Source: Octopus bimaculoides
Taxonomy: Eukaryota
DNA length: 45,712 nucleotides
Direction: 5' to 3'
NCBI RefSeq assembly: GCF_001194135.2
Contig: NC_068983.1
Span: 111,315,392-111,361,103 of the forward strand
Translations under genes and position numbers: made by a program
Shown here: positions 13,377 through 45,357 of the stretch, in pieces
Layout: each line of letters begins with the position of its first letter
Position numbering within the stretch: position 1 is the stretch's first letter
Notes under the pieces: generated by a model
Told to the model about the DNA's origin: nothing
The model's input: the letters and a program-made list of their open reading frames with translations, nothing else
Database searches by the model: none

Positions 13377-15392
13377 ACAAGCAAAAGAACTCGGTTTCAC
13401 TCGGGTTATAAACTCATAGCCTTAACACAGTACTATTTGCTTGTAGGGTAAGATTTGTGTATTTCTCAAAAAGTAATACTTTTAACACTCAATGGTTTTA
13501 TACTTTTTGCACATTACATACAAATACTATTCATATAAATGTTTTTTCATATACTATGTTTTCTGTCATGCCATGTCAACTCTGGAACATCCAACATACA
13601 ACTGACCATGTGAGAAGCATGGTTAAAAGAAGGTTATGTCCCACCACCTTTAGAGATTGACCTTGCGCTTTGTTGATAGACATAGCAAAGCTCAATTTGA
13701 CTGAAAACTGAAGTCTCTTGAATTGAAAGGGGAGATCATTTCAGATGAGAGGGGTCCTTGGAATGAAGACATTCTCACACACCATGTTGTCTGTAATTAT
13801 TGGTGCTTCCAACACATGGAGCATGCCTGTTTTAACAACCAGCCTTGTTCCATTGCAGAATCTGGGTGCATCAAGGTTTCTTAACAGCATTATGAGGGCA
13901 CCTGTTTTTATGTTCAGAATGTTTGGGGGAAATGCTGGTGGTGGAAGTGAATTAAGAAACTTCACTGGGTAATGCGTTGCTTCTTCTTGATCAGGAACAG
14001 AGTCAATTGATCTGTATGAACATTCAGTTCCTGGAAGCTGAGACAACAGATTTAGATTCAGCTTGTCTATATGGTCATTCCTTGGTGCCAGAATTGTTCT
14101 TTCACATAGCCACTTGTGACTTGTAGTTTGTGGCAACGCTTGGAAAGACCCTTTGTCTTCAGTTTTTCACGGGAGTCAGTCATATTGCTTTAAAGAAAGT
14201 AGTGGCGACTATCTTCTGAATCCTGTGGAAGTTTTCTATTTCCAATGTAAAGTCACTTCTTGGAGAACTCTGCAGCTAATGGGTCCCCATGAATGTGAAC
14301 CCTCATGTTAGTTGTCAGAGTAAGCTGCTTGACATGTTGCGGCTCATCTGCCTTTGTTCCTCTGGGAATGACAGTCAGAGTTTGCCTGAAGTCATGCGGT
14401 GGGTAACACCACACATGACCTTCTTATTGTTTCTGAAATCTTGTAGTGTTCTATCAAGAGCTTCAAAAGTTACCTTATGGAATATTATTGCCTTATTCCA
14501 GACAATGAGTTTGGCATCTGTAAGGAGCTTTGCTAATGCTGTATTCTTGGACATGTTGCATAATAGAGATTCATTTTGGATCAGGTTCAAGGGTAGCTTG
14601 AATGTTGAATGGGCTGTTCTTCCACCTGTTAGGAGTGTGGCTGCAATTCCATAGGATGCAACAGCCATAGCAATCTTCTTCTTCTGTCTCACCTTGGCAA
14701 GGGTCAGGTTGATCAATAATGTCTTTCCTGTGCCTCCTATTGCTTGTCAGACGTGCATACATCTGTTCAGCACTTTAAGATGTTCGGGCAACACCAATAC
14801 GCAACTGTTTTTTAAATTTTTTATGCACAACTCTTGTCACGTCTTTCTCAGATGCTCCGGCTGCTCTTTCTTGGCGTGATTCCCTTTTATTCGGGTGTCT
14901 CTTTCCTTCGACAGAGAGATTGTTTTGGCTAACCTTGACACTGGAGACAAATTTGACACCTTCCATCTAGGAATGGTTATTTACGGATACAGAAATACAC
15001 CGGCACAGAAGATTGTAAACAATGAAAGTAGATGTAATAATTTTTTGGTATCAGAAATCGTTACGTTTCTATGAGGAACGTGAAGAGTAATGTTTTCACG
15101 ATAAAAATATACAGGAAGCTGTGACGTTCATGGATTTTCCACAGGAACCCCAAAAACAATGCAACTGAAATGAAATAGAAGCGACAGAAATGTAAATATT
15201 CATCAACGCGTGTGTGTGTATACGTGTGTGTGCGTGTGCACGCGCGCATGCGTGTGTGTGTGTGCGTGTGCGTGTGCGTGTGCGTGTGTGGCTAGCAACA
15301 ATTGCGACGTCAGACAAACATGTGTGTGTCCACCTAGCTCCAGTTGCTACGTCAGTACCGGAAGTTGACGTTGAAAAACCTTAAAGAAATGA

Positions 15393-15717: not shown

Positions 15718-15953
15718 TATATATATGTGTGTGTGTATGTATGTATNNNNNNNNNNNNNNNNNNNNNNNNNNNNNNNNNNNNNNNNNNNNNNNNNNNNNN
15801 NNNNNNNNNNNNNNNNNNNNNNNNNNNNNNNNNNNNNNNNNNNNNNNNNNNNNNNNNNNNNNNNNNNNNNNNNNNNNNNNNNNNNNNNNNNNNNNNNNNN
15901 NNNNNNNNNNNNNNNNNNNNNNNNNNNNNNNNNNNNNNNNNNTATATATATAT

Positions 15954-16548: not shown

Positions 16549-17885
16549 CGAAAATACATTTTTTTGTTTTCTGGTTCGGTGTATAGACAAATGAGTCCTG
16601 CAAACTACCTGCCCTGGAGCAACCAACATAAAGGTGACCGTAAGAAAAGCAAGCCAGTAGATTTCAAAGACTGACCTTGAACTTTATAAATAGATATTGC
16701 AAAGCAAAGTCGCATTGGGATTTGTACCTCAAATGGTATGTCTGTTAGTTTGATTGGAATTCTTGGAATGAAAACTTTTTCAGAGAAACATCCAGTAAAG
16801 ATGGTAGCTTATTTCATATTAGGTGATAATGTCTTCCCAATCAACTTTGTCCCATCGCATAATTTAGGAGGATCTAAATTTCTTAGAAGCATTATTGGGA
16901 CTCATGCCTTCAGAAAAAAGTTTATGCGGAGGAATTCCATGCGGAACTCTGTTGGGCAATAGACAGCTTGATTTTCATCAAGGACTGAATCAACTGAATT
17001 GTACTTCTTAATGACTGTTGGAATCTTATTCATTAATTCATGGTTAATCCTTGCTATTGTCTCATTTTCTGGAGCAAGAATTGCCCTTTCACACAACCAT
17101 TTATGTAAATTATAATTATTATTTAAGTCTGGAAATACCCTCTTTTCTAATTCAGCTGGGGAATTCACCATGATAGCAATATGAGCCAAACTGATATCAC
17201 CATTCCCATCAAATGGTACTTTCCCATTTCCTAATTGGAGGAGCCAAGTTGAAAGCTGTTTTGCAGATTGGTTCCCATGTAATAAAGCTCACACGTTAGT
17301 ATTGAAGGAGAATTTCAGTACTTTATTCCATAGATGTGAAGACTTAATGCGTGCTTTTATTTCATCAGATCTTGTTCATCTCGGAATGACTGATAATGTC
17401 CTGATAAAACTAATGTAACTTCTCCCATATATTTATTGTTGCTCCTGATGTCCTGTAAGGTCTTACCAAGAGCTTCTGTTGCACCTCTATGTGACATGGC
17501 GTATTTATCCCAAATGATAAGGTGTCATCGGCACAACACTTCTGCTGAAACTGAATTTTTGCTCATGTTACAAATTGGACTGTCGTTTGTGACCAGGTTT
17601 AGTGGAAATTTAAAAGCAGAATGAGCTGTTCGTCTTCTTAGGAGAATGGTGGTAACAAAGCCAGACAATGGTACGGCAAATGAAATTTTAATTTTTATTT
17701 TGCTACCTTACCAAGGAGAAAAGCAATGTTACTAATACTTTACCTGTGCCACCAGGAGCATCAAGAAAGAAAATTCCTCTGCTTTTTGTTTTCTGGCAAT
17801 TATGGAACGCCGCACGCACACACGCACACAGATATACACACACAGTATCAAGCATTAGATAAAATGGACGTGCGCGTGTGTGTGT

Positions 17886-17943
<58 letters not shown>

Positions 17944-18000
17944 TAGAAAGAGAGAGAGAGAAAGATAGGGAGAAAGAGAGACAGAGAGAGAAAGAGAGAC

Positions 18001-18051
<51 letters not shown>

Positions 18052-18228
18052 AAGAGAGAGAGTGAGAGAAATAGAGAGAGAGAGAGAGAAAGAGAGCGAG
18101 AGAGATAGATATATATATAGAGAGAGAGAGTGAAAGGTATGTTGTCATGTATACGTACATACATAAATAAATAGGCATACATCTTTCTGTGTGTGAGAGA
18201 GTGCCACTTAGACATCACTTTCACTCAC

Positions 18229-37250: not shown

Positions 37251-38929
37251 AATACAGAAAAGATTACGTTCCCAAGATCTTATAATATTAACTTGAATCT
37301 TAAAATGGAGATAAATGATGTAGAATTCTTATACAGTAATTACCAATTACAAGGAGAATTGCAACTAGTATTTGTAGAAGAAAACCTGTATACGATCGTA
37401 TAACCTGCAAGAAATTACAATTAAATTTGCCTTAAAAATACCAAGCATTCTTCAAAAGAGTTACCAATACAGAAAAGACAAATACCGAATACAATATGTC
37501 TTAAAGGATACAAGATGCGTAGACCACAATGCTGGTAGAACGATAAATATTTGACGCAAAAGTATCTCTCTCAGAGCATCCAAATGAACTGAGAATGACA
37601 GAAGCTACACGTGTGCATAAAACGGGTTCTGGCACTTTACAATCTCTTTAAAATACTTGCAAATAGCCCACGAGACAAGAACAATCATGAATAAGACAGA
37701 AAATACACTCAAAATAAAATGTCCATAGAAACAGGAAATACTGCTATCTGTGTTCAATACACACAGATCTGTGCAAAGCGTTCCTTTAAAAGCAAATGCT
37801 TTACACAACACAAAAATCTGTAAAATGCATCAGTACTAATGACATTAGAAATACCTTTATAGAAGTAAAATTTATTGAGACGTTCTAACTAACAAAACAT
37901 GGGACACACGAGCTACAGTTGTCACCTTTCACAACCTGCTGTGTCCATACAGGATATATTCAAGAATTAATGCTTCATGCACAAAAACGAAGTTTGTAAA
38001 CATGACACAAAATATCTAGGAACCTGTAATACTATAATAACACCATCAAAATACCTTTATGGACACTAAAACATTTTATCATCTCTTAAGCTATTCATGT
38101 AGCAATAGTTCCAGAAATATTCCTATCAGAACATCAAACGCACACCATTCCAAATTATACTCAGGGAGATGCTTTTACATTGGATATGGTCTTATAACAT
38201 ATAAAATCTTGCCTTCAGTAAATAAATGTAAAAAATGACATTGGTAAACTAATGTGAAACGATACTACACTGAAAAGGGGAAAAATCTTGTAAGAAGAAG
38301 CACAATAATACAAATACACATGTATTCAAATGCAATACAAACATATGTACCAACCGCATCAACTGTCCAGACAGATTAGCCCTGATAAAAAAAACTGCAC
38401 TTGAAGATTACGAGCACTGTTTGCAGGCTACATCAATACATACATTTCCATATATTCAAATAGACGATCAAAGAAAAGCGATGTGATATCATTGTAACAA
38501 ATTAGTTCTCCATGCTAAACAATTCTCACTAACACACACACATACCACATCAGACCAACTGTAACAACTCTTCATCAGACATCGTGTTCTGCTCCTCATA
38601 CCTATTTTACACAAACATTATGCAAGTAATTCCTCAAATTTTCTTAGATCTCCTATCAAATATTATCGCAACAAACACAAATATCAACGACGAAAGTTAG
38701 TACAATTCAACAAGATTCCAAGTAGTACAAAAGAGTGAGTTTCATCAAGGTTTTCAAAATTCGATACTATTTCAATCAACAATACCCAGCAATACGTGTT
38801 TAGTAGAAAGTGGGTTATACATCTTTAGATTGTATACCTGACTTTCTACTATAAAATTAAAGAATATAACGGAACGCTGAACTCCAGACCAAACAACTTA
38901 AACAACATTTATTTAGGTGGTAAACATAC

Positions 38930-38991
38930 ATATCTTTAGTTGTACATCTTTAGAGGTGAGAATAACGAGCTGTCGAGTGTAAGACCGAAAG
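38930..38991 (-). other. Candidate non-coding first exon with pyrimidine-rich (TCT/TOP-like) start
   Basis: Minus strand ctctctacatCTTTCGG...AAAGATAT|gtatgt. Only a 3-codon uORF (ATG TAC AAC TAA). Confidence 0.4.
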
Positions 38992-39088
38992 ATGTAGAGA
39001 GACAGACAGCTTAAACACACGTCCATGCTCAATCGCTGGCCAGCGAGAAAAAGAATGAATTGAGCGGGAAACGCTTGCCTGTTTAATT

Positions 39089-39300
39089 CTACGCATGCGT
39101 AAAACTACGCATGCGCAGGCGTTACTACACATGTATAGCGCTGATTCGAAACCGAATCCCTAAGCGTCCTGCCAAACATCACTAGGAAACTACCATAGTT
39201 TCACATGATCGGTCTATTAACCGACCAATCAGCGTAAAGCGTTGGTGTGGACGGAGTTTAATCGATCATTCTAGAATTTGGCTTTTAGTCCCCTATAAAA
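39089..39300. promoter_or_regulatory. Putative bidirectional promoter 1: two (A)CTACGCATGCG NRF1-like sites, CCAAT box, TTCTAGAA, TATAAAA
   Basis: Motifs at 39089-39117, 39225-39233 (ccaatcagc), 39269-39276 and 39294-39300. Locally CpG-rich in a CpG-poor window. Confidence 0.6.
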
Positions 39301-40171
39301 ATCGTTCGGTGCGATTTTTACAGTCAGACAATTTAGACAGATGACACAGGAAGATGGCCCAGACGGACAGCTAAAATAGATGACCAAAAACCTCTGTCGC
39401 CACGGAGATAGCACAGTTGTTTTTAGATATGTTGGGCAAACATGTTGCCGTACCAATAGCTTTCTGTTATCTCAGAGCAATATCTTTCTACCAGTCCGTC
39501 TGTAATTATTGCTGATGTTAACTGTAAAATACCAACGCAGTTTGTCTTTATATGCGACAATAGATTTTTCTGTTAAATGATCACGGGTGTTGCTAATTTA
39601 CTTCTTCATGCAGTCAAGAAATGAATTTTCGTTCATTAACTCAACCGGCTACCACAGCAGCATGCATGAAACATCATAAGACAACTCGTGACTCTTACAT
39701 TCAACTGAATAATTATAATTGCATCTAAAAACTACACCTGACAAGTTAATATGAAAAATACAGGCCCAGTTATATAGCAGACATAGACAACTCCATGAAA
39801 ATCAGAGACAGCATCAAACAATACATTAACGCTATACACAATCGAAATAAAACTTACCGTCAAACAACTAAACAAATAAAATATCAAATGTTTCAAAAAC
39901 AGAAATTTTACAAATATTAGTTATCCGAAAGGAAAACATCCTTGCAGTAAAACATTATACTGATTAATCAACTGTATCACCACACAATATAACCTCAAAT
40001 AATATACCCACACTGCTCTCATAGCTCTAAAATCAGCCATCGAAACCAACACACTGAAAATAGAAACACAGACGAAATATACACATTTTCTAGCGACATA
40101 ACTCTTTTGACGCTACCTTAGATCAGTCACCTTAAAAGTATTATCATACCACAAACACATGCATGCATACA

Positions 40172-40205
<34 letters not shown>

Positions 40206-40253
40206 TACGTACACACGCACACACACACACACACACACAAAGTGATAGATAGA

Positions 40254-40290
<37 letters not shown>

Positions 40291-40729
40291 AAGGCTTGCA
40301 GTTAAAAACATCTCTGTATTTAGAAGCAGCAGAAAACCAAGAAAAAGAGCAAAATGATGCCTAAACATGCTTTGAGTAATCACAAGTAGCGGAATTGATC
40401 AAAAGAAATAAACAACAACGGGTATAGATAATATATAAAATTCATCGTGAACCCTTATCTTCCAACAACAGACTACAGTTAATTACAAAGAACCCAAAAC
40501 AGCACCCTACTCATCCTCACAAATTCTTCAACTAGCCACTAGCCACCGACAGACCTGAAAAAAAAAATTACTAAAATGGTAATAACATCTGGGGATACAA
40601 AAGTCAGGGTTTGTTGCTGCAGCAAGTTTCAACCCACACAGACTTCTGTCACTACAGGAAAACATCCTGTAGAGGATTCGAGATCGAATAACGTAATAGC
40701 CGAACAGACACCACAATGAGACCACTGTC

Positions 40730-40821
40730 GTTTCACTTGATCGGCCAATTAAACGACCAATCAGCACCAGTCTGTCGCATAATTTGACTTTCTAGAACTT
40801 TGTCATTGATCTCCATATATA
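40730..40821. promoter_or_regulatory. Putative promoter 2, paralogous to promoter 1: two CCAAT boxes, TTCTAGAA, TATATA
   Basis: gtttcacttgatcggccaattaaacgaccaatcagc versus gtttcacatgatcggtctattaaccgaccaatcagc at 39198. ttctagaa at 40790, tatata at 40816. Confidence 0.6.
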
Positions 40822-41639
40822 GGTGGTTTTTGGCAGTAATCGAAGAACGTGAGGTAGCTGTGCGTAGAATAGAGAGACAGTCGCTCGACGTCTCCTTTCT
40901 CTTTCAGCACCTATTGGTATTGAGAAGACACACATTTTGCCGACATGAATATCGCACAATTATTTTCCGGGTCAACCACAGATTGCTATATCAGTTAATT
41001 GCCATAGATCTCAGTGGTGTGTCTCTCCCAGTGTGTAATTGTCGTTAGTTTTTGCCAAAGGGCCAACACAGAAAACAGTATGTGCAGTAAATAAAGCTTC
41101 TCTCGAATGCTTGCGAGTGTTATTAATTACTTCTACATGCAATCTTAGAAATAAATTTTCATTCACCAGCAGCTATCGTGACTAGCACAATGACAACAGC
41201 TGTCATGACAACCCAAACACTATGAAATACTCTATAGCAATATCCGAACATTCTAAAAGAACTATCTTCTATTCAACTCAGACAGGAATACAACCAGGTG
41301 CACACAGAAATAGCAACAAAACCAACAACCTTACAGGACCCAAATACTGAAATCCACACCATCAACAATAAGTGCAAAGGAACAGAAAGTGCCGTGTTCT
41401 GTCCCAGTTTACCTTGATTGTCTCATTTGTTGCCACTATCAGAATCTACGAGTAGACTGGACAAGAAAAAGGGTAGGTACCAAATAAAAAGAATAGTTGG
41501 AACTTTCACTTTGCATCCATATGTTTTTGCCAGGCAGAGACATCGTATCATTGGGAAGATCGATCTAAAGTTTATATGCCATACAAATGATCGATCAAGG
41601 CTGAACAGGGATTACATCATAATCCATCCCTCTGGAGGC

Positions 41640-41835
41640 ACAAAGCCTGAAATTTTAGGGTTGGGGAGGCTAATCTACTACATTGATCCCAGTGCTCAAC
41701 TGCTACTTGTTTTATCGACCTCGAAAGGATGAATGACAAAATCGACCTCGGCGAAATTTAAACTCAAGACGTAAAGCCAAAAGAAAGGTCACCAAGTATT
41801 TTGTGCGATGCAGTAACGACTCTGCCACCGCTCAA
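41640..41835 (-). mobile_element. SINE family B
   Basis: cacaaagcctgaaattttagg...aatcgacctcggcgaaatttaaactcaagacgtaaag...gactctgccaccgc. Confidence 0.8.
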
Positions 41836-41863
41836 GGGACCATATAATAATAATAATATTAAT

Positions 41864-41949: not shown

Positions 41950-43145
41950 CTGATCTTTGTACTGTGCTTGATAACGCTAACACTGATTCTGAGGAAAGGC
42001 GATTCCACTCCTTTGATATGGAGCAGGGGTAATCGCATGAACAGTAGACGAGCTAAACAGCTTAGACAGAAAGACAAAGAAGTTGCTAACTAGATATGGG
42101 TCACTCCACCCAAAAAGTGACACAGACAGACTGTATGTACCAAGAAAAAGATGGGGAAGAGGACTTATTGGATGCGAACACATTAGAGCAAAAGAAAACA
42201 ACATAGCATGGTATGTAAAAATATACCGCAGAACCGCTATTATTAGAAGTCAGAAGGTCAGGCTTGTGTAGGATGAAAGATTGCAAAGATAAAGCACTAT
42301 ACAAGAAATTGAAAACAAATGAAACTGAAAATAGGTGGGTAAAGAAAAGGATGCATGGCCAATTTCATAGGGATATTGAAGATAAGAGAGACAGAGAAAA
42401 AATATGGCTGTGGATGACTAAAAGGGATTTAAAACCGGGAACGGAGGCTCTCATCTGTGCTGCCCAACAGCAAGCACTAAGAACAAACTACATAAAATAC
42501 GGAATAGACAACACAGCAGAAAGTGATAAGTGCAGATTGTGTGGACAAAACGGTGAAACCGTATGGCATATTACCAGCCAGTGTACACTACTAGCCCAGA
42601 AGGAATATAAGAGACGCCACGACAATATATCCAGGCTTGTCCATTGGACGCTCTGCAACAAGTATGGACTTGAGAAAGTGAAAAATTGGTACGACCACAA
42701 TTCTGAAAGTTTGTCGGAAATAGAAATGCAAAGATCCTATTGGATTTTATGATTCAGTGCGACCATGAGATGGAGAATAGAAAGCCGGACAATTGAGAAA
42801 GAAAACAAACTATGCTGTATTATAGATATAGCATGCCCAGCTGACAACAAGGTATGCGATAAGGAAGAAAGAAAAGTCGGGAGATATGACAGGTTAGCTT
42901 GGAAAACTAAGCAGTTATGGTGGATGAAAAAGGTAGCAGTAAAACCAATAATTATCGGAGCCCTGGGAACAGTGAGCAAAAATCTCGAGAAGTACGTGGA
43001 ACAAATAGCAATAAGGGTGTAGCACTTGCAGAAAACAGCACCGCATGAAACCGCTCGAATACTCCAGAAGGTGCTCTAAAAATCAGAGGTGTTACCTTAG
43101 TTCACTGGTAGTGAACAGCTGACACTGTAGTACATCTCCAGCGTT
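41950..43145 (+). mobile_element. 5'-truncated R4/Dong-like non-LTR retrotransposon with CCHC knuckle and restriction-like endonuclease
   Basis: LHPKSDTDRLYVPRK..GRGL; MHGQF; LICAAQQQALRTN; CRLC...ETVWHITSQC; RRHD; KPD...IIDIACP; IIIGALG; QK...TARILQKVL*. Frameshifted. (AAT)n on both sides. Confidence 0.9.
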
Positions 43146-43162: not shown

Positions 43163-43203
<41 letters not shown>

Positions 43204-43249: not shown

Positions 43250-43465
43250 TGATAACTTCAAATTTTGACATACGCACTGAACCTTTGAGGGGAAAAGTAA
43301 GTCTATTACTTCAACCCCAGGGTTCAACTTGTATGTATTTTATCAACCCCGAAAGGATGAAAGGTAAAGTCGACCTCAGTGGAAATTGAACCCAAAAAGT
43401 AAATACGGACGAAATGCTGCAAAACATTTTGTCCGGCGTACTAACGATTTAGCAAGCTCGCAGCC
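43250..43465 (-). mobile_element. SINE family B
   Basis: ttcaattttgacatacgcac...accccgaaaggatgaaaggtaaagtcgacctcagtggaaattgaaccc...gcaagctcgc. Confidence 0.8.
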
Positions 43466-44483
43466 AGGGACTACGTCATAATAGCAATAACAACAACAAT
43501 AACAATTATGATTTCTTTTATTTTCAATAATATTAATAACAATAACTTACTGCGATATTTATACGCTTGCATCTTTGAAATGCTTTATCCATAGTGGTTA
43601 TAAACCAATCCTAGGACAAATAACTATTTTCAATAAAATTAAATATTCTCACCTTCCTGCATATATCTCCAACAGAATACACCACTAAAGACATTGCCAA
43701 CAAAATCTACAACCTTCGAGTCAACAAAGGAGTACCTATATGATCAATCAATTTGCTAGATATAACAGCGAAATATTCCTTATATGACATGCTCTAACAG
43801 TTAAAGGCTATTCTGGATATTGTATCACAGATATACTGCATCTGTTTAAACCGACAGGATGGTCACGGCTGTAACAGCTTTGAACACATGCATACTCAGT
43901 TCAAGTTGAGCTAAAGCTAACCAACAACAATTTTAATCTTGAATACACTGACAAGAATCCTTTCTTAGCAATAACAAATTTACATTTGCTTCAAAAATAT
44001 CGAACATGGCACAACTTATTACCACTTAATACATCATACTCAATAAAGATATTTTACATTTGCAAAAAGTTAGTTTTTTTAGAAGGAAGATAACGTTAAT
44101 TGAATCAATCTTGGCTAAGCCTTTGTACTTAATTTATCATCCGCTAAAGTATGCTAAAACTTGACTGCAATAAGATTTAAAATCACATGTAAAGACGACA
44201 ACTGAAATACGAAAATGCATTTAGCCATGCGTTCTACTGAATCTACCACTCCATATGTCTTTTCGACTCACAGTCACTAATGACATTGTGCCACTCATAC
44301 AAAGTATTTGCATTTAAGACATAAGCGAAGAGCATGTCAGTATCGCTATACATCATAATATGGGCAATAAAGGAACCACAGACGAATCCTCACGCAGAAA
44401 CGGCTTATGAATAAAGTGACATACTATTTCGAGTCTGTGTGCCTCTGAGAGTGTCTAATTATATTCATGTGGGCCTGTAACTC

Positions 44484-44677: not shown

Positions 44678-45357
44678 CTTCCTCTTTTCCTCTCGTTGCT
44701 CACCTATTCTTCTACTTCCTCCCTTTGTTTCTCCCTACCACTCTCTTTCTCTCTTTCCCTTACACCGGCATGGTCACATGCTTCCGGTCACTAATCCTTT
44801 TCTTCCTTGGCTATCGCCGAGCAAACACGCGAATTTACTTCGTCCCCACTTTCAAGTTCGTGCCTCACAGCGTTCATACACATATAATTTTTCCCGTCTG
44901 GCCGTATAGCCTTTTCCGTTTGTTTTCCTATATTGTTTTTTGTCCGCCACTACATTCCTCCATGGCACAGGTTTAATTTGTGTATACAAATTTAATTTGC
45001 GGTCCATGGGAAGAGCCGTTTTAACGATGCGTCCTACCCAGCTCTTCGAAACGCCGGTGTTAAAACGGGGGTAGCTGATGAAGGAAAATATTCTCTATGT
45101 GGCTTGTGTGTTTTCTGTACTCTGATTATCATTATTTTCTTGTCTACGTTTTGTTTGCAATGTCCTGTACCCAGATATGCACCTATACATACAGGTGGAT
45201 GTCGGTATGCACATACCTGTACGTATATATGCATACACTCATTTATTNNNNNNNNNNNNNNNNNNTATATATATATATATTTCTAACAAAACTGTCCGTT
45301 GAACATATTACTCCACCTCTGGTATTTGAGTACTCTTTTTTCCACCTTATATATACA

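What the first reader, a model, noticed from the sequence alone, without database searches (positions are those of the whole stretch)
38940..41165. Diverged tandem duplication of a promoter plus downstream conserved blocks in a repeat-poor island
Seen: two units about 1.5 kb apart (38940-39635 and 40660-41165) share collinear blocks. (a) acatctttagaggtgagaataacg / acatcctgtagagg...gaataacg. (b) gtttcac.tgatcgg....ttaa.cgaccaatcagc. (c) ttctagaa.tttg, then a TATA box. (d) acat.ttgccg. (e) atctcag...ccagt...tgtaatt...ccaac.cag. (f) gtgttgctaatttacttcttcatgcagtcaagaaatgaattttcgttca / gtgttattaattacttctacatgcaatcttagaaataaattttcattca. The spacers between blocks have diverged and differ in length. 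There is no ORF, TIR or tail. Inference: blocks conserved within diverged spacers suggest selection, either on duplicated bidirectional promoters or on a pair of ~330-nt TATA/CCAAT-driven non-coding RNA genes on the plus strand, possibly stress-responsive (TTCTAGAA is a minimal heat-shock element core). I match it to no RNA family I know.
Basis: partly seen in the sequence, partly recalled or inferred. Interest (0 to 1): 0.7.

Follow-up and report, generated by a model that had tools for sequence, protein, structure and literature searches.

The report
Old duplicated promoter-like segment in octopus DNA
Two ~516-base copies of one old sequence sit 1.5 kb apart in an octopus-type genome and look like small gene start-and-stop units, but I could not tell whether they are working host elements or the two end-repeats of a long-dead mobile element.

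Summary
The duplication is real but smaller than reported. Unit 1 is 39121-39635 and unit 2 is 40648-41165, both on the + strand (blastn E=3e-11, ~69% identity in aligned bases, 57% counting gaps). No third copy exists in the window.

Reader blocks b, c, e and f are collinear. Block a is chance (P=0.53). Block d is out of register with a better match.

Two stretches are more conserved than a uniform neutral model predicts. One is the E-box/CCAAT stretch (48/61) and the other is the last 49 nt (41/50); two such windows give P~0.001-0.002. The first ~100 nt after the TATA box looks no more alike than random sequence.

Both units are compositional islands with zero strand skew and CpG o/e ~1, set in A/C-skewed flanks.

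I found no Rfam match, no fold-stability signal, no conserved ORF and no protein homologue.

The layout is CCAAT, TTCTAGAA, TATA, then poly(A) hexamers ~260-330 nt on, ending in CA. That fits a compact Pol II unit. It equally fits a retroelement LTR (U3-R-U5).

My estimates: host duplicated promoter/short non-coding unit ~0.4, ancient LTR pair ~0.3, neutral relic ~0.2. Genome copy number, orthologues and transcription could not be checked here.

The parts
39121..39635 (+). Unit 1 (515 bp), a compositional island: A.30 C.21 G.19 T.30, skews ~0, CpG o/e 1.07
40648..41165 (+). Unit 2 (518 bp), a compositional island: A.30 C.21 G.20 T.30, skews ~0, CpG o/e 0.93
39173..39233 (+). Best-conserved upstream block of unit 1. 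Holds E-box-like TCACATGA and the NF-Y-type CCAAT box CGACCAATCAGC (39222-39233).
   Evidence: 79% identical to 40705-40765 without gaps; 12-nt exact run
40705..40765 (+). Matching block of unit 2. Holds TCACTTGA and two CCAAT boxes (40745, 40757), including CGACCAATCAGC (40754-40765).
39269..39276 (+). TTCTAGAA palindrome of unit 1, 25 nt upstream of the TATA box
40790..40797 (+). TTCTAGAA palindrome of unit 2, 26 nt upstream of the TATA box
39294..39301 (+). TATAAAAA of unit 1. An Inr-like TCAGAC has its A at 39326, 32 nt downstream.
   Evidence: Read from the sequence
40816..40821 (+). TATATA of unit 2
39330..39429 (+). Least conserved stretch (unit 2 counterpart 40850-40949). Similarity is no better than shuffled sequence, and large indels fall here.
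   Evidence: z=0.13; alignment
39559..39564 (+). AATAGA, a variant poly(A) hexamer in unit 1, homologous to AATAAA at 41090-41095 in unit 2. GTGTT follows 28/27 nt after the hexamer start (39587, 41117).
   Evidence: read
39587..39635 (+). 3' block of unit 1: GTGTT, a T-rich stretch, a second hexamer AATGAA (39620-39625), ending in ...TTCA
   Evidence: 41/50 columns identical to 41117-41165
41117..41165 (+). 3' block of unit 2: GTGTT, a T-rich stretch, AATAAA (41150-41155), ending in ...TTCA
39636..40647 (.). Spacer. A/C-skewed, not homologous to either outer flank, holds (AC)n at 40169-40239 and (AG)n at 40247-40285, and has no Pfam hit in the + frames.
38950..39120 (+). G- and CpG-rich extension upstream of unit 1 only (CpG o/e 1.27). 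Holds two CGCATGCG palindromes (39092-39099, 39108-39115). Unit 2 has no counterpart.

Best explanation
An old local duplication of a ~516-bp host segment that works as a compact RNA polymerase II module. The upstream part is an E-box plus CCAAT (NF-Y-type) cluster, then a TTCTAGAA palindrome, then a TATA box. Poly(A)-type signals follow about 260-330 nt downstream.

In this reading, selection has kept the promoter-proximal ~190 bp and the last ~50 bp, while the 5' part of the transcribed stretch drifted freely. The product would be a short, unstructured, probably polyadenylated non-coding transcript whose sequence matters little, as in lncRNA-type genes where the promoter is better conserved than the RNA. 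Alternatively the units act only as promoter or enhancer modules.

Shown here: the duplication, its limits, the motif order, the uneven conservation, the compositional islands, and the absence of coding or RNA-structure signal.

Inferred: that the motifs function, that transcription happens, and that selection rather than chance or gene conversion kept the blocks.
For: - Homology is significant and confined to two copies.
- Conservation is uneven. Two separate 50-column windows have 40-41 matches (P~0.001-0.002) and the window variance gives P~0.02-0.03 against a neutral simulation matched for identity and gaps.
- The interior stretch 39330-39429 is indistinguishable from random (z=0.13), while neighbouring interior pieces give z~4.
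- The best block is a perfect NF-Y-type consensus kept for 12 nt in both copies.
- CCAAT + TTCnnGAA + TATAWA in promoter order occurs nowhere else on either strand of the window.
- Both units have the same skew-free composition and CpG o/e ~1. All three flanks are strongly A>T and C>G with CpG o/e 0.34-0.83.
- The unit lengths stay at 515 and 518 bp despite ~28 gap openings.
- Similarity may continue weakly ~100 nt past the right end (1-5% of control windows score as well). That would suit a segmental duplication better than an LTR.
- No PBS, PPT, TSD or gag/pol remnant was found.
Against: - I have no transcription data, no orthologues and no genome-wide copy count.
- The statistical support for selection is modest. 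The finding was picked because its blocks stood out, so selection bias applies.
- Unit 1 has only variant hexamers (AATAGA, AATGAA).
- The putative start sites are not at homologous bases. The distance from TATA to the conserved T5-CAGT block is 28 nt in one copy and 19 nt in the other.
- Homology stops sharply at all four ends. The flanks are unrelated and the copies end in CA, which an LTR pair explains without extra assumptions.
- In octopus under 10% of CpGs are methylated and transposons are unmethylated and CpG-dense (PMC9476566). CpG o/e ~1 is therefore not evidence of promoter activity.
Confidence: 0.4

Rival explanations
1. The two units are the 5' and 3' long terminal repeats of one ancient LTR retroelement that is internally deleted or non-autonomous and is decaying neutrally. 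U3 would hold the CCAAT, TTCTAGAA and TATA motifs. R would run to the AATAAA at 41090. U5 would be the final ~55 nt with the GU-rich GTGTT and the terminal CA. The 1.0-kb spacer would be what remains of the internal region.
For: - There are two direct copies in the same orientation with sharp ends and unrelated inner and outer flanks.
- Both copies end in CA. Unit 2 can be read as TG...CA (TGTCAC at 40646, or TGTAGAGG at 40668). Unit 1 reads TGTATAGC at 39132.
- Promoter, then AATAAA, then GTGTT 21 nt after the hexamer's end, then a short tail is the usual U3-R-U5 order.
- An AGGAAAACA run lies just before 40668.
- The A-rich + strand of the spacer suits a retroelement sense strand.
- The simulated per-lineage divergence of ~0.2 suggests roughly 60-70 My on the scale in PMC13282606 (JC 0.2 at about 56 My). 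That is old but possible.
Against: - There is no TGG or PBS-like sequence in the 30 nt after unit 1.
- The 16 nt before 40646 are only 37% purine.
- No target-site duplication is visible (ACACA or CAGGC against CCAGC).
- The + frames of the spacer give no gag/pol Pfam hit.
- The six-frame protein search of the units found nothing.
- Uniform neutral decay does not predict the uneven conservation or the random-looking interior stretch.
- Inner and outer flanks share the same unusual skew.
- There is a weak hint of similarity beyond the right end.
- LTR elements are a minor repeat class in octopus beside LINEs and SINEs (PMC13282606).
Confidence: 0.3
2. A neutral relic. Either an old small segmental duplication or two fragments of an unclassified low-copy repeat, with no present function. 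The promoter-like words and better-kept blocks are chance survivors or old gene-conversion patches.
For: - Overall identity is low (57% with gaps).
- TATAWA occurs 226 and 221 times and CCAAT 39 and 36 times per strand in the window, so single motifs are cheap.
- There is no structure, coding or family signal.
- Blocks a and d of the finding turned out to be chance or out of register.
- The finding was selected because its blocks caught the eye.
Against: - The heterogeneity tests argue against it.
- The best block is exactly a full NF-Y consensus in promoter order with a TATA box.
- Two skew-free islands with identical composition sit in skewed flanks.
Confidence: 0.2
3. Each unit encodes a small protein or micropeptide. 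The candidates are unit 1 ..EIAQLFLDMLGKHVAVPIAFCYLRAISFYQSVCNYC* and unit 2 MNIAQLF.. / ..VCNCR*.
For: - IAQLF is kept through three third-position changes.
- Both reading frames stop at aligned positions after VCN.
Against: - Unit 1 has ACG where unit 2 has ATG.
- Unit 2 is frameshifted by 4 nt relative to unit 1.
- The third-position bias is not significant (my estimate about 0.3 after allowing three phases).
- Amino-acid identity in the C-terminal part is what 62% DNA identity gives.
- There is no Pfam hit at E<=10 and no homologue among 5.8 billion proteins.
Confidence: 0.04
4. A structured non-coding RNA gene pair of a known or new class: telomerase RNA, an snRNA/snoRNA-type gene, a Pol III type-3 gene or a pri-miRNA.
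For: - A TATA box lies ~25 nt downstream of a conserved block, as in PSE-TATA promoters.
- T-runs lie ~90-100 nt after the putative start.
- Vertebrate telomerase RNA genes also use CCAAT and TATA (from my own knowledge).
Against: - No Rfam match at gathering scores or at E<=10 beyond chance-level hits.
- Fold z-scores are -0.7 to -1.5 on either strand.
- The consensus fold is negligible.
- The would-be RNA 5' part is the least conserved stretch.
- There is no CCCTAA-type template in the transcribed part.
- The small hairpin in block f is not stable.
Confidence: 0.03

Closest known systems
LTR of an LTR retrotransposon or retrovirus (U3-R-U5), present as a 5'/3' pair
   Same: Two direct ~0.5-kb repeats with sharp ends and unrelated flanks. 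Each holds CCAAT and TATA upstream, a poly(A) hexamer followed by a GU-rich element, and a terminal CA.
   Different: No PBS, PPT, target-site duplication or gag/pol remnant is recognisable. Conservation along the repeat is uneven. Genome copy number is unknown.
Tandemly duplicated lncRNA-type genes with promoters better conserved than transcripts
   Same: The upstream ~190 bp and the 3'-end region are better kept than the body. There is no ORF and no stable fold. The presumed transcripts have similar lengths.
   Different: No transcript evidence at all. The presumed RNA is very short (~260-310 nt) and single-exon. Unit 1 lacks a canonical AAUAAA.
Heat-shock gene promoters of the hsp70 type (HSE + CCAAT + TATA)
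   Same: The same three kinds of element appear in a similar order and spacing upstream of a TATA box.
   Different: There are only two perfect nGAAn units, plus GAT or TTG as a partial third. A functional HSE usually has at least three. No heat-shock protein ORF follows.
Vertebrate telomerase RNA gene (CCAAT/TATA-driven Pol II non-coding RNA)
   Same: The promoter type and the size range.
   Different: No template for TTAGGG repeats, no H/ACA-like 3' end, no Rfam hit and no conserved structure.

Membership tests
LTR retrotransposon (LTR pair) | Two direct terminal repeats in the same orientation with sharp, shared boundaries | tested here: met
   39121-39635 and 40648-41165 are both on the + strand. 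The flanks are not alignable.
LTR retrotransposon (LTR pair) | 5'-TG...CA-3' termini | tested here: inconclusive
   Both copies end in CA. TG is present at 40646 or 40668 in unit 2. In unit 1 TG is present only at 39132, and 39119-39120 reads GC. The left boundary is uncertain by ~20 nt.
LTR retrotransposon (LTR pair) | Target-site duplication flanking the element | tested here: not met
   ACACA or CAGGC on the left against CCAGC on the right gives 2-3 matches of 5. At this divergence the test has little power.
LTR retrotransposon (LTR pair) | Primer-binding site (TGG...) just after the 5' LTR and a polypurine tract just before the 3' LTR | tested here: not met
   There is no TGG in 39636-39665. 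The 16 nt before 40646 are 37% purine. Only a short AGGAAAACA lies before the alternative start at 40668.
LTR retrotransposon (LTR pair) | Internal gag/pol sequence or remnants | tested here: not met
   The + frames of 39637-40647 give no Pfam hit at E<=0.1. A non-autonomous element would not need these remnants.
LTR retrotransposon (LTR pair) | Dispersed copies or solo LTRs elsewhere in the genome | not testable with these tools
   Only 45.7 kb plus two 20-kb loci could be searched, and none was found. No cephalopod genome can be searched by DNA here.
HSF-regulated (heat-shock) promoter | At least three contiguous alternating nGAAn units | tested here: not met
   Unit 1 reads GAT-ca-TTC-ta-GAA-tt-TGG. 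Unit 2 reads TTC-ta-GAA-ct-TTG. That is two perfect units plus one 2/3 match.
HSF-regulated (heat-shock) promoter | Induction by heat or stress | not testable with these tools
   No expression data were available.
CCAAT/TATA Pol II core promoter | CCAAT box 60-100 bp and TATA ~30 bp upstream of a mapped start site | tested here: inconclusive
   The motifs are present at suitable spacing: CCAAT to TATA is 69 nt in unit 1, and 59 and 71 nt in unit 2. No start site has been mapped.
Canonical poly(A) site | AAUAAA or a common variant 10-30 nt before the cleavage site, with a GU- or U-rich element downstream | tested here: inconclusive
   Unit 2 has AATAAA at 41090 followed by GTGTT at 41117, and a second AATAAA at 41150. 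Unit 1 has only AATAGA and AATGAA at the homologous places.
Any Rfam RNA family | Covariance-model score at or above the gathering threshold | tested here: not met
   There were 0 matches in the whole window. Only chance-level hits with E>=0.5 appeared in 38700-41400.
Telomerase RNA | Template complementary to about 1.5 telomere repeats (CUAACCCUAA type) | tested here: not met
   The only CCCTAA (39158-39163) lies upstream of the CCAAT box in unit 1 and is absent from unit 2. That cephalopod telomeres are TTAGGG is from my own knowledge.
Pol III type-3 or snRNA-type gene | An RNA-coding part conserved at least as well as the promoter | tested here: not met
   The first ~100 nt after the TATA box are no more alike than shuffled sequence.
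Protein-coding or micropeptide gene | An ORF kept in both copies with a coding-type substitution pattern or homologues | tested here: not met
   There is a frameshift and a lost ATG between the copies, no Pfam hit and no homologue.

The most novel reading that the evidence does not exclude
The units are a pair of octopod-specific, HSF/NF-Y-driven, stress-inducible short polyadenylated non-coding RNA genes. Their sequence is free to drift but their regulated transcription is selected. They would be a molluscan counterpart of stress lncRNAs such as Drosophila hsr-omega.
Probability: 0.06. Interest if true: 0.6.

Novelty: new member of a known kind. Interest (0 to 1): 0.25.

Why it matters
If the units are host elements under selection, they would be a clean small example of duplicated Pol II promoter or short lncRNA units in a cephalopod, where regulatory DNA is poorly mapped. 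It would be easy to test with existing octopus RNA-seq, ATAC and comparative genomes.

If they are an old LTR pair, the finding is ordinary repeat annotation. Its only interest is that promoter words can outlive the rest of a dead element and mimic a gene.

In both cases the case shows that promoter plus poly(A) anatomy alone cannot separate a mini-gene from an LTR.

Tried and rejected
- **Rfam.** Whole window at gathering scores and the region at E<=10 gave nothing usable.
- **Single-strand folds.** Both putative transcripts on both strands gave z -0.7 to -1.5. RNAalifold on the pair gave -13.9 kcal/mol over 335 columns. A small AU-rich hairpin in block f has one compensatory change, but it is not the minimum-energy fold in unit 1 and has z~0. 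I dropped it.
- **Protein search.** A six-frame translation of both units, concatenated, against 5.8 billion proteins gave no hit at E<=10. This also closed the route to orthologous loci through called ORFs.
- **Exact-pattern scans.** Degenerate block b and block f patterns in JGI metagenome contigs and IMG/VR found nothing.
- **Small-ORF idea.** I rejected IAQLF...VCN and a recalled likeness to sarcolipin-type peptides because of the frameshift, the missing ATG and the lack of any Pfam hit.
- **LINE 5'UTR idea.** The LINE on the + strand starts only at 41999. The related LINE locus L001 has nothing like the unit. The sequences after the two units are unrelated.
- **Penelope-type pseudo-LTRs.** No hammerhead ribozyme hit.
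- **tRNA look-up for a PBS test.** No tRNA genes in the window, L001 or L002.
- **CpG o/e as a promoter mark.** Abandoned after reading that octopus transposons and intergenic DNA are unmethylated (PMC9476566).
- **RT-like translation at 36400-37200.** I saw it by eye, but Pfam did not confirm it.
Full report
**Context.** The window is animal DNA full of microsatellites, SINE copies and assembly gaps.
- A PIF1/Helitron-type ORF at 14375-14716 (-) is 83% identical to an Octopus bimaculoides protein. All other hits are 64% or lower.
- The O. bimaculoides locus fetched with that protein shares several dispersed repeat families with the window at 70-87% identity, but it is not syntenic.

**The observation.**
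- blastn pairs 39143-39635 with 40675-41165 on the same strand (E=3e-11). It finds nothing else in 45.7 kb.
- A profile built from the pair also finds no third copy in the window or in two other loci.
- Edge tests put the left limit at 39121/40648, at GTYACTACA...GATTCGAnAnCGAAT (P=0.002).
- Both copies end at ...TTCA, at 39635 and 41165. The lengths are 515 and 518 bp.
- Fifteen shared words keep an offset of 1512-1543.
- Identity is 57% counting gaps and about 69% in aligned bases.

**Is the conservation uneven?** I simulated two lineages from a random ancestor with uniform substitution and indel rates tuned to the observed identity and gap counts.
- The best 50-column window (41 matches, block f) is reached in 4-5% of simulations.
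- Two separate windows with at least 40 matches (blocks b and f) are reached in 0.1-0.2%.
- The variance of window identity is reached in 2-3%.
- The 100 nt after the putative start (39330-39429 vs 40850-40949) is no more alike than shuffled sequence (z=0.13). The next interior pieces give z~4.
- The evidence for selection is real but modest. The finding was also chosen because its blocks stood out.

**Anatomy on the + strand.**
- An E-box-like word and a full NF-Y-type CCAAT consensus come first. CGACCAATCAGC is exact in both copies, and unit 2 has a second CCAAT 12 nt upstream.
- TTCTAGAA follows, with TATAAAAA or TATATA 25-26 nt further on.
- In both strands of the window, a TATAWA with a CCAAT 40-110 nt upstream and a TTCnnGAA between them occurs only at these two places.
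- About 265 nt after the TATA box lies AATAGA in unit 1 and AATAAA in unit 2. GTGTT follows 27-28 nt after the hexamer start.
- A second hexamer (AATGAA in unit 1, AATAAA in unit 2) lies 10 nt before the terminal CA.
- TTCTAGAA is only two perfect heat-shock pentamers plus a partial third.

**What it is not.**
- No Rfam family matches.
- Neither strand folds better than shuffles.
- The pair has no consensus structure worth the name.
- No frame is conserved. A tempting IAQLF...VCN frame has ACG in place of ATG in one copy and a 4-nt frameshift in the other.
- There are no Pfam hits and no protein relatives in any frame.
- There is no telomere-template word in the transcribed part.
- A Pol III or snRNA-type reading fails because the would-be RNA is the least conserved part.

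**Composition.**
- Both units are A.30 C.21 G.19-.20 T.30, with zero AT and GC skew and CpG o/e about 1.
- The outer left flank, the spacer and the outer right flank all have AT skew +0.20 to +0.31, GC skew -0.16 to -0.40 and CpG o/e 0.34-0.83.
- The units are therefore sharp islands.
- Octopus intergenic DNA and transposons are essentially unmethylated and CpG-dense (PMC9476566), so the CpG value says little. The absence of skew is the more telling feature.
- Unit 1 alone has a further G- and CpG-rich 170 bp upstream (38950-39120) with two CGCATGCG palindromes.

**Surroundings.**
- The flanks of the two units are not homologous to each other.
- The spacer holds (AC)n and (AG)n runs.
- After unit 2 come a SINE copy (41637-41863) and a LINE tail (41999-43076, +).
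- Similarity may continue weakly for ~100 nt past the right end. Only 1-5% of control windows from the same kind of flank score as well.

**Explanations.** The anatomy is that of a compact Pol II unit, and two things have that anatomy.

(1) A host module, either a promoter or a short unstructured polyadenylated RNA gene, duplicated locally and kept by selection on the promoter and 3' end.
- For: the uneven conservation, the skew-free islands, the equal lengths, the hint of homology beyond the right end, and the missing LTR hallmarks.
- I give it 0.4.

(2) The two LTRs of one ancient retroelement (U3-R-U5).
- For: four sharp ends, unrelated flanks, the terminal CA, a possible TG start, and the AATAAA-GTGTT-tail order.
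- Against: no PBS, PPT, TSD or gag/pol remnant, and the uneven decay.
- The simulated per-lineage divergence of ~0.2 suggests very roughly 60-70 My on the scale of PMC13282606.
- I give it 0.3.

(3) A neutral relic with chance blocks: 0.2.

Micropeptide and structured-RNA readings together: under 0.1.

**What could not be done.** No cephalopod genome or transcriptome can be searched by DNA with these tools. Routes through called ORFs and exact-pattern scans found nothing. Copy number, orthology and transcription, which would settle the matter, remain open.

**Verdict.** This is a real, low-copy (within the window), old duplication with promoter-like anatomy. Its selection inference is modestly supported. 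Its heat-shock and structured-RNA suggestions are not supported. An LTR origin remains a serious rival. Interest is low to moderate.

Noticed in passing
window 13741-14716 (-) and 16902-18224 (-): Fragments of a PIF1-like helicase, probably Helitron-type. Pfam gives PIF1 (E=9e-26) and the Pif1 2B domain. The best protein hit is O. bimaculoides PIF1 at 83%. A related copy in O. bimaculoides CM046608.1 is 81% identical over 1.3 kb of DNA.
   Followed up: partly
window 41999-43076 (+), tail (AAT)13 at 43163-43202: 3' part of a LINE: the reverse-transcriptase C-terminus plus the zf-RVT domain. It is 62% identical in protein to an ORF on an ENA contig (L001). Named relatives are from corals and a sponge. 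A SINE lies just upstream.
   Followed up: partly
window 41637-41863, 43297-43545, 5663-6050 (two copies head to head), 34779-34962, 8786-8993, 9786-9846: A SINE-like dispersed repeat of ~190-250 bp at 68-83% pairwise identity. It is also present in the O. bimaculoides locus L002.
   Followed up: partly
window 38950-39120: A G- and CpG-rich stretch upstream of unit 1 only. It has a direct repeat of TACGCATGCG (39090-39099 and 39106-39115). From memory, the palindromes resemble NRF-1/ewg-type sites. There is also a consensus-like splice donor AG|GTGAGA at 38953-38960.
   Followed up: no
window 39642-39654 (+): CAACCGGCTACCA, just after unit 1, looks like the 3' end of a tRNA in sense orientation. 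Its complement TGGTAGCCGG would be PBS-like, but it is on the wrong strand and side for an LTR element made of these two units. ARAGORN finds no tRNA there.
   Followed up: partly
window 3311-3892, 31101-31655, 32029-32559, 32987-33325: Very long microsatellites: (GAT)~193, (TC)~281, (TTA)~177 and (TAT)~111.
   Followed up: no
window 2972-3110, 15747-15942, 28319-28514, 30856-30923, 45248-45265: Runs of N (assembly gaps). Most lie inside or next to microsatellites, so the window comes from a scaffolded draft assembly.
   Followed up: no
window 37250-38940, 39636-40160, 40290-40647, 41166-41630: About 3 kb of low-copy sequence with strong strand asymmetry (A>T by 20-31%, C>G by 16-40%) surrounds both units. 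Its origin is unknown. It has no Pfam hit in the + frames and no other copy in the window.
   Followed up: partly
window 36400-37200 (+): The translation looks RT-like by eye (..SISRALEIVVKSHILRH..QYGFPRD..), but Pfam gave no hit, so this is unconfirmed.
   Followed up: partly
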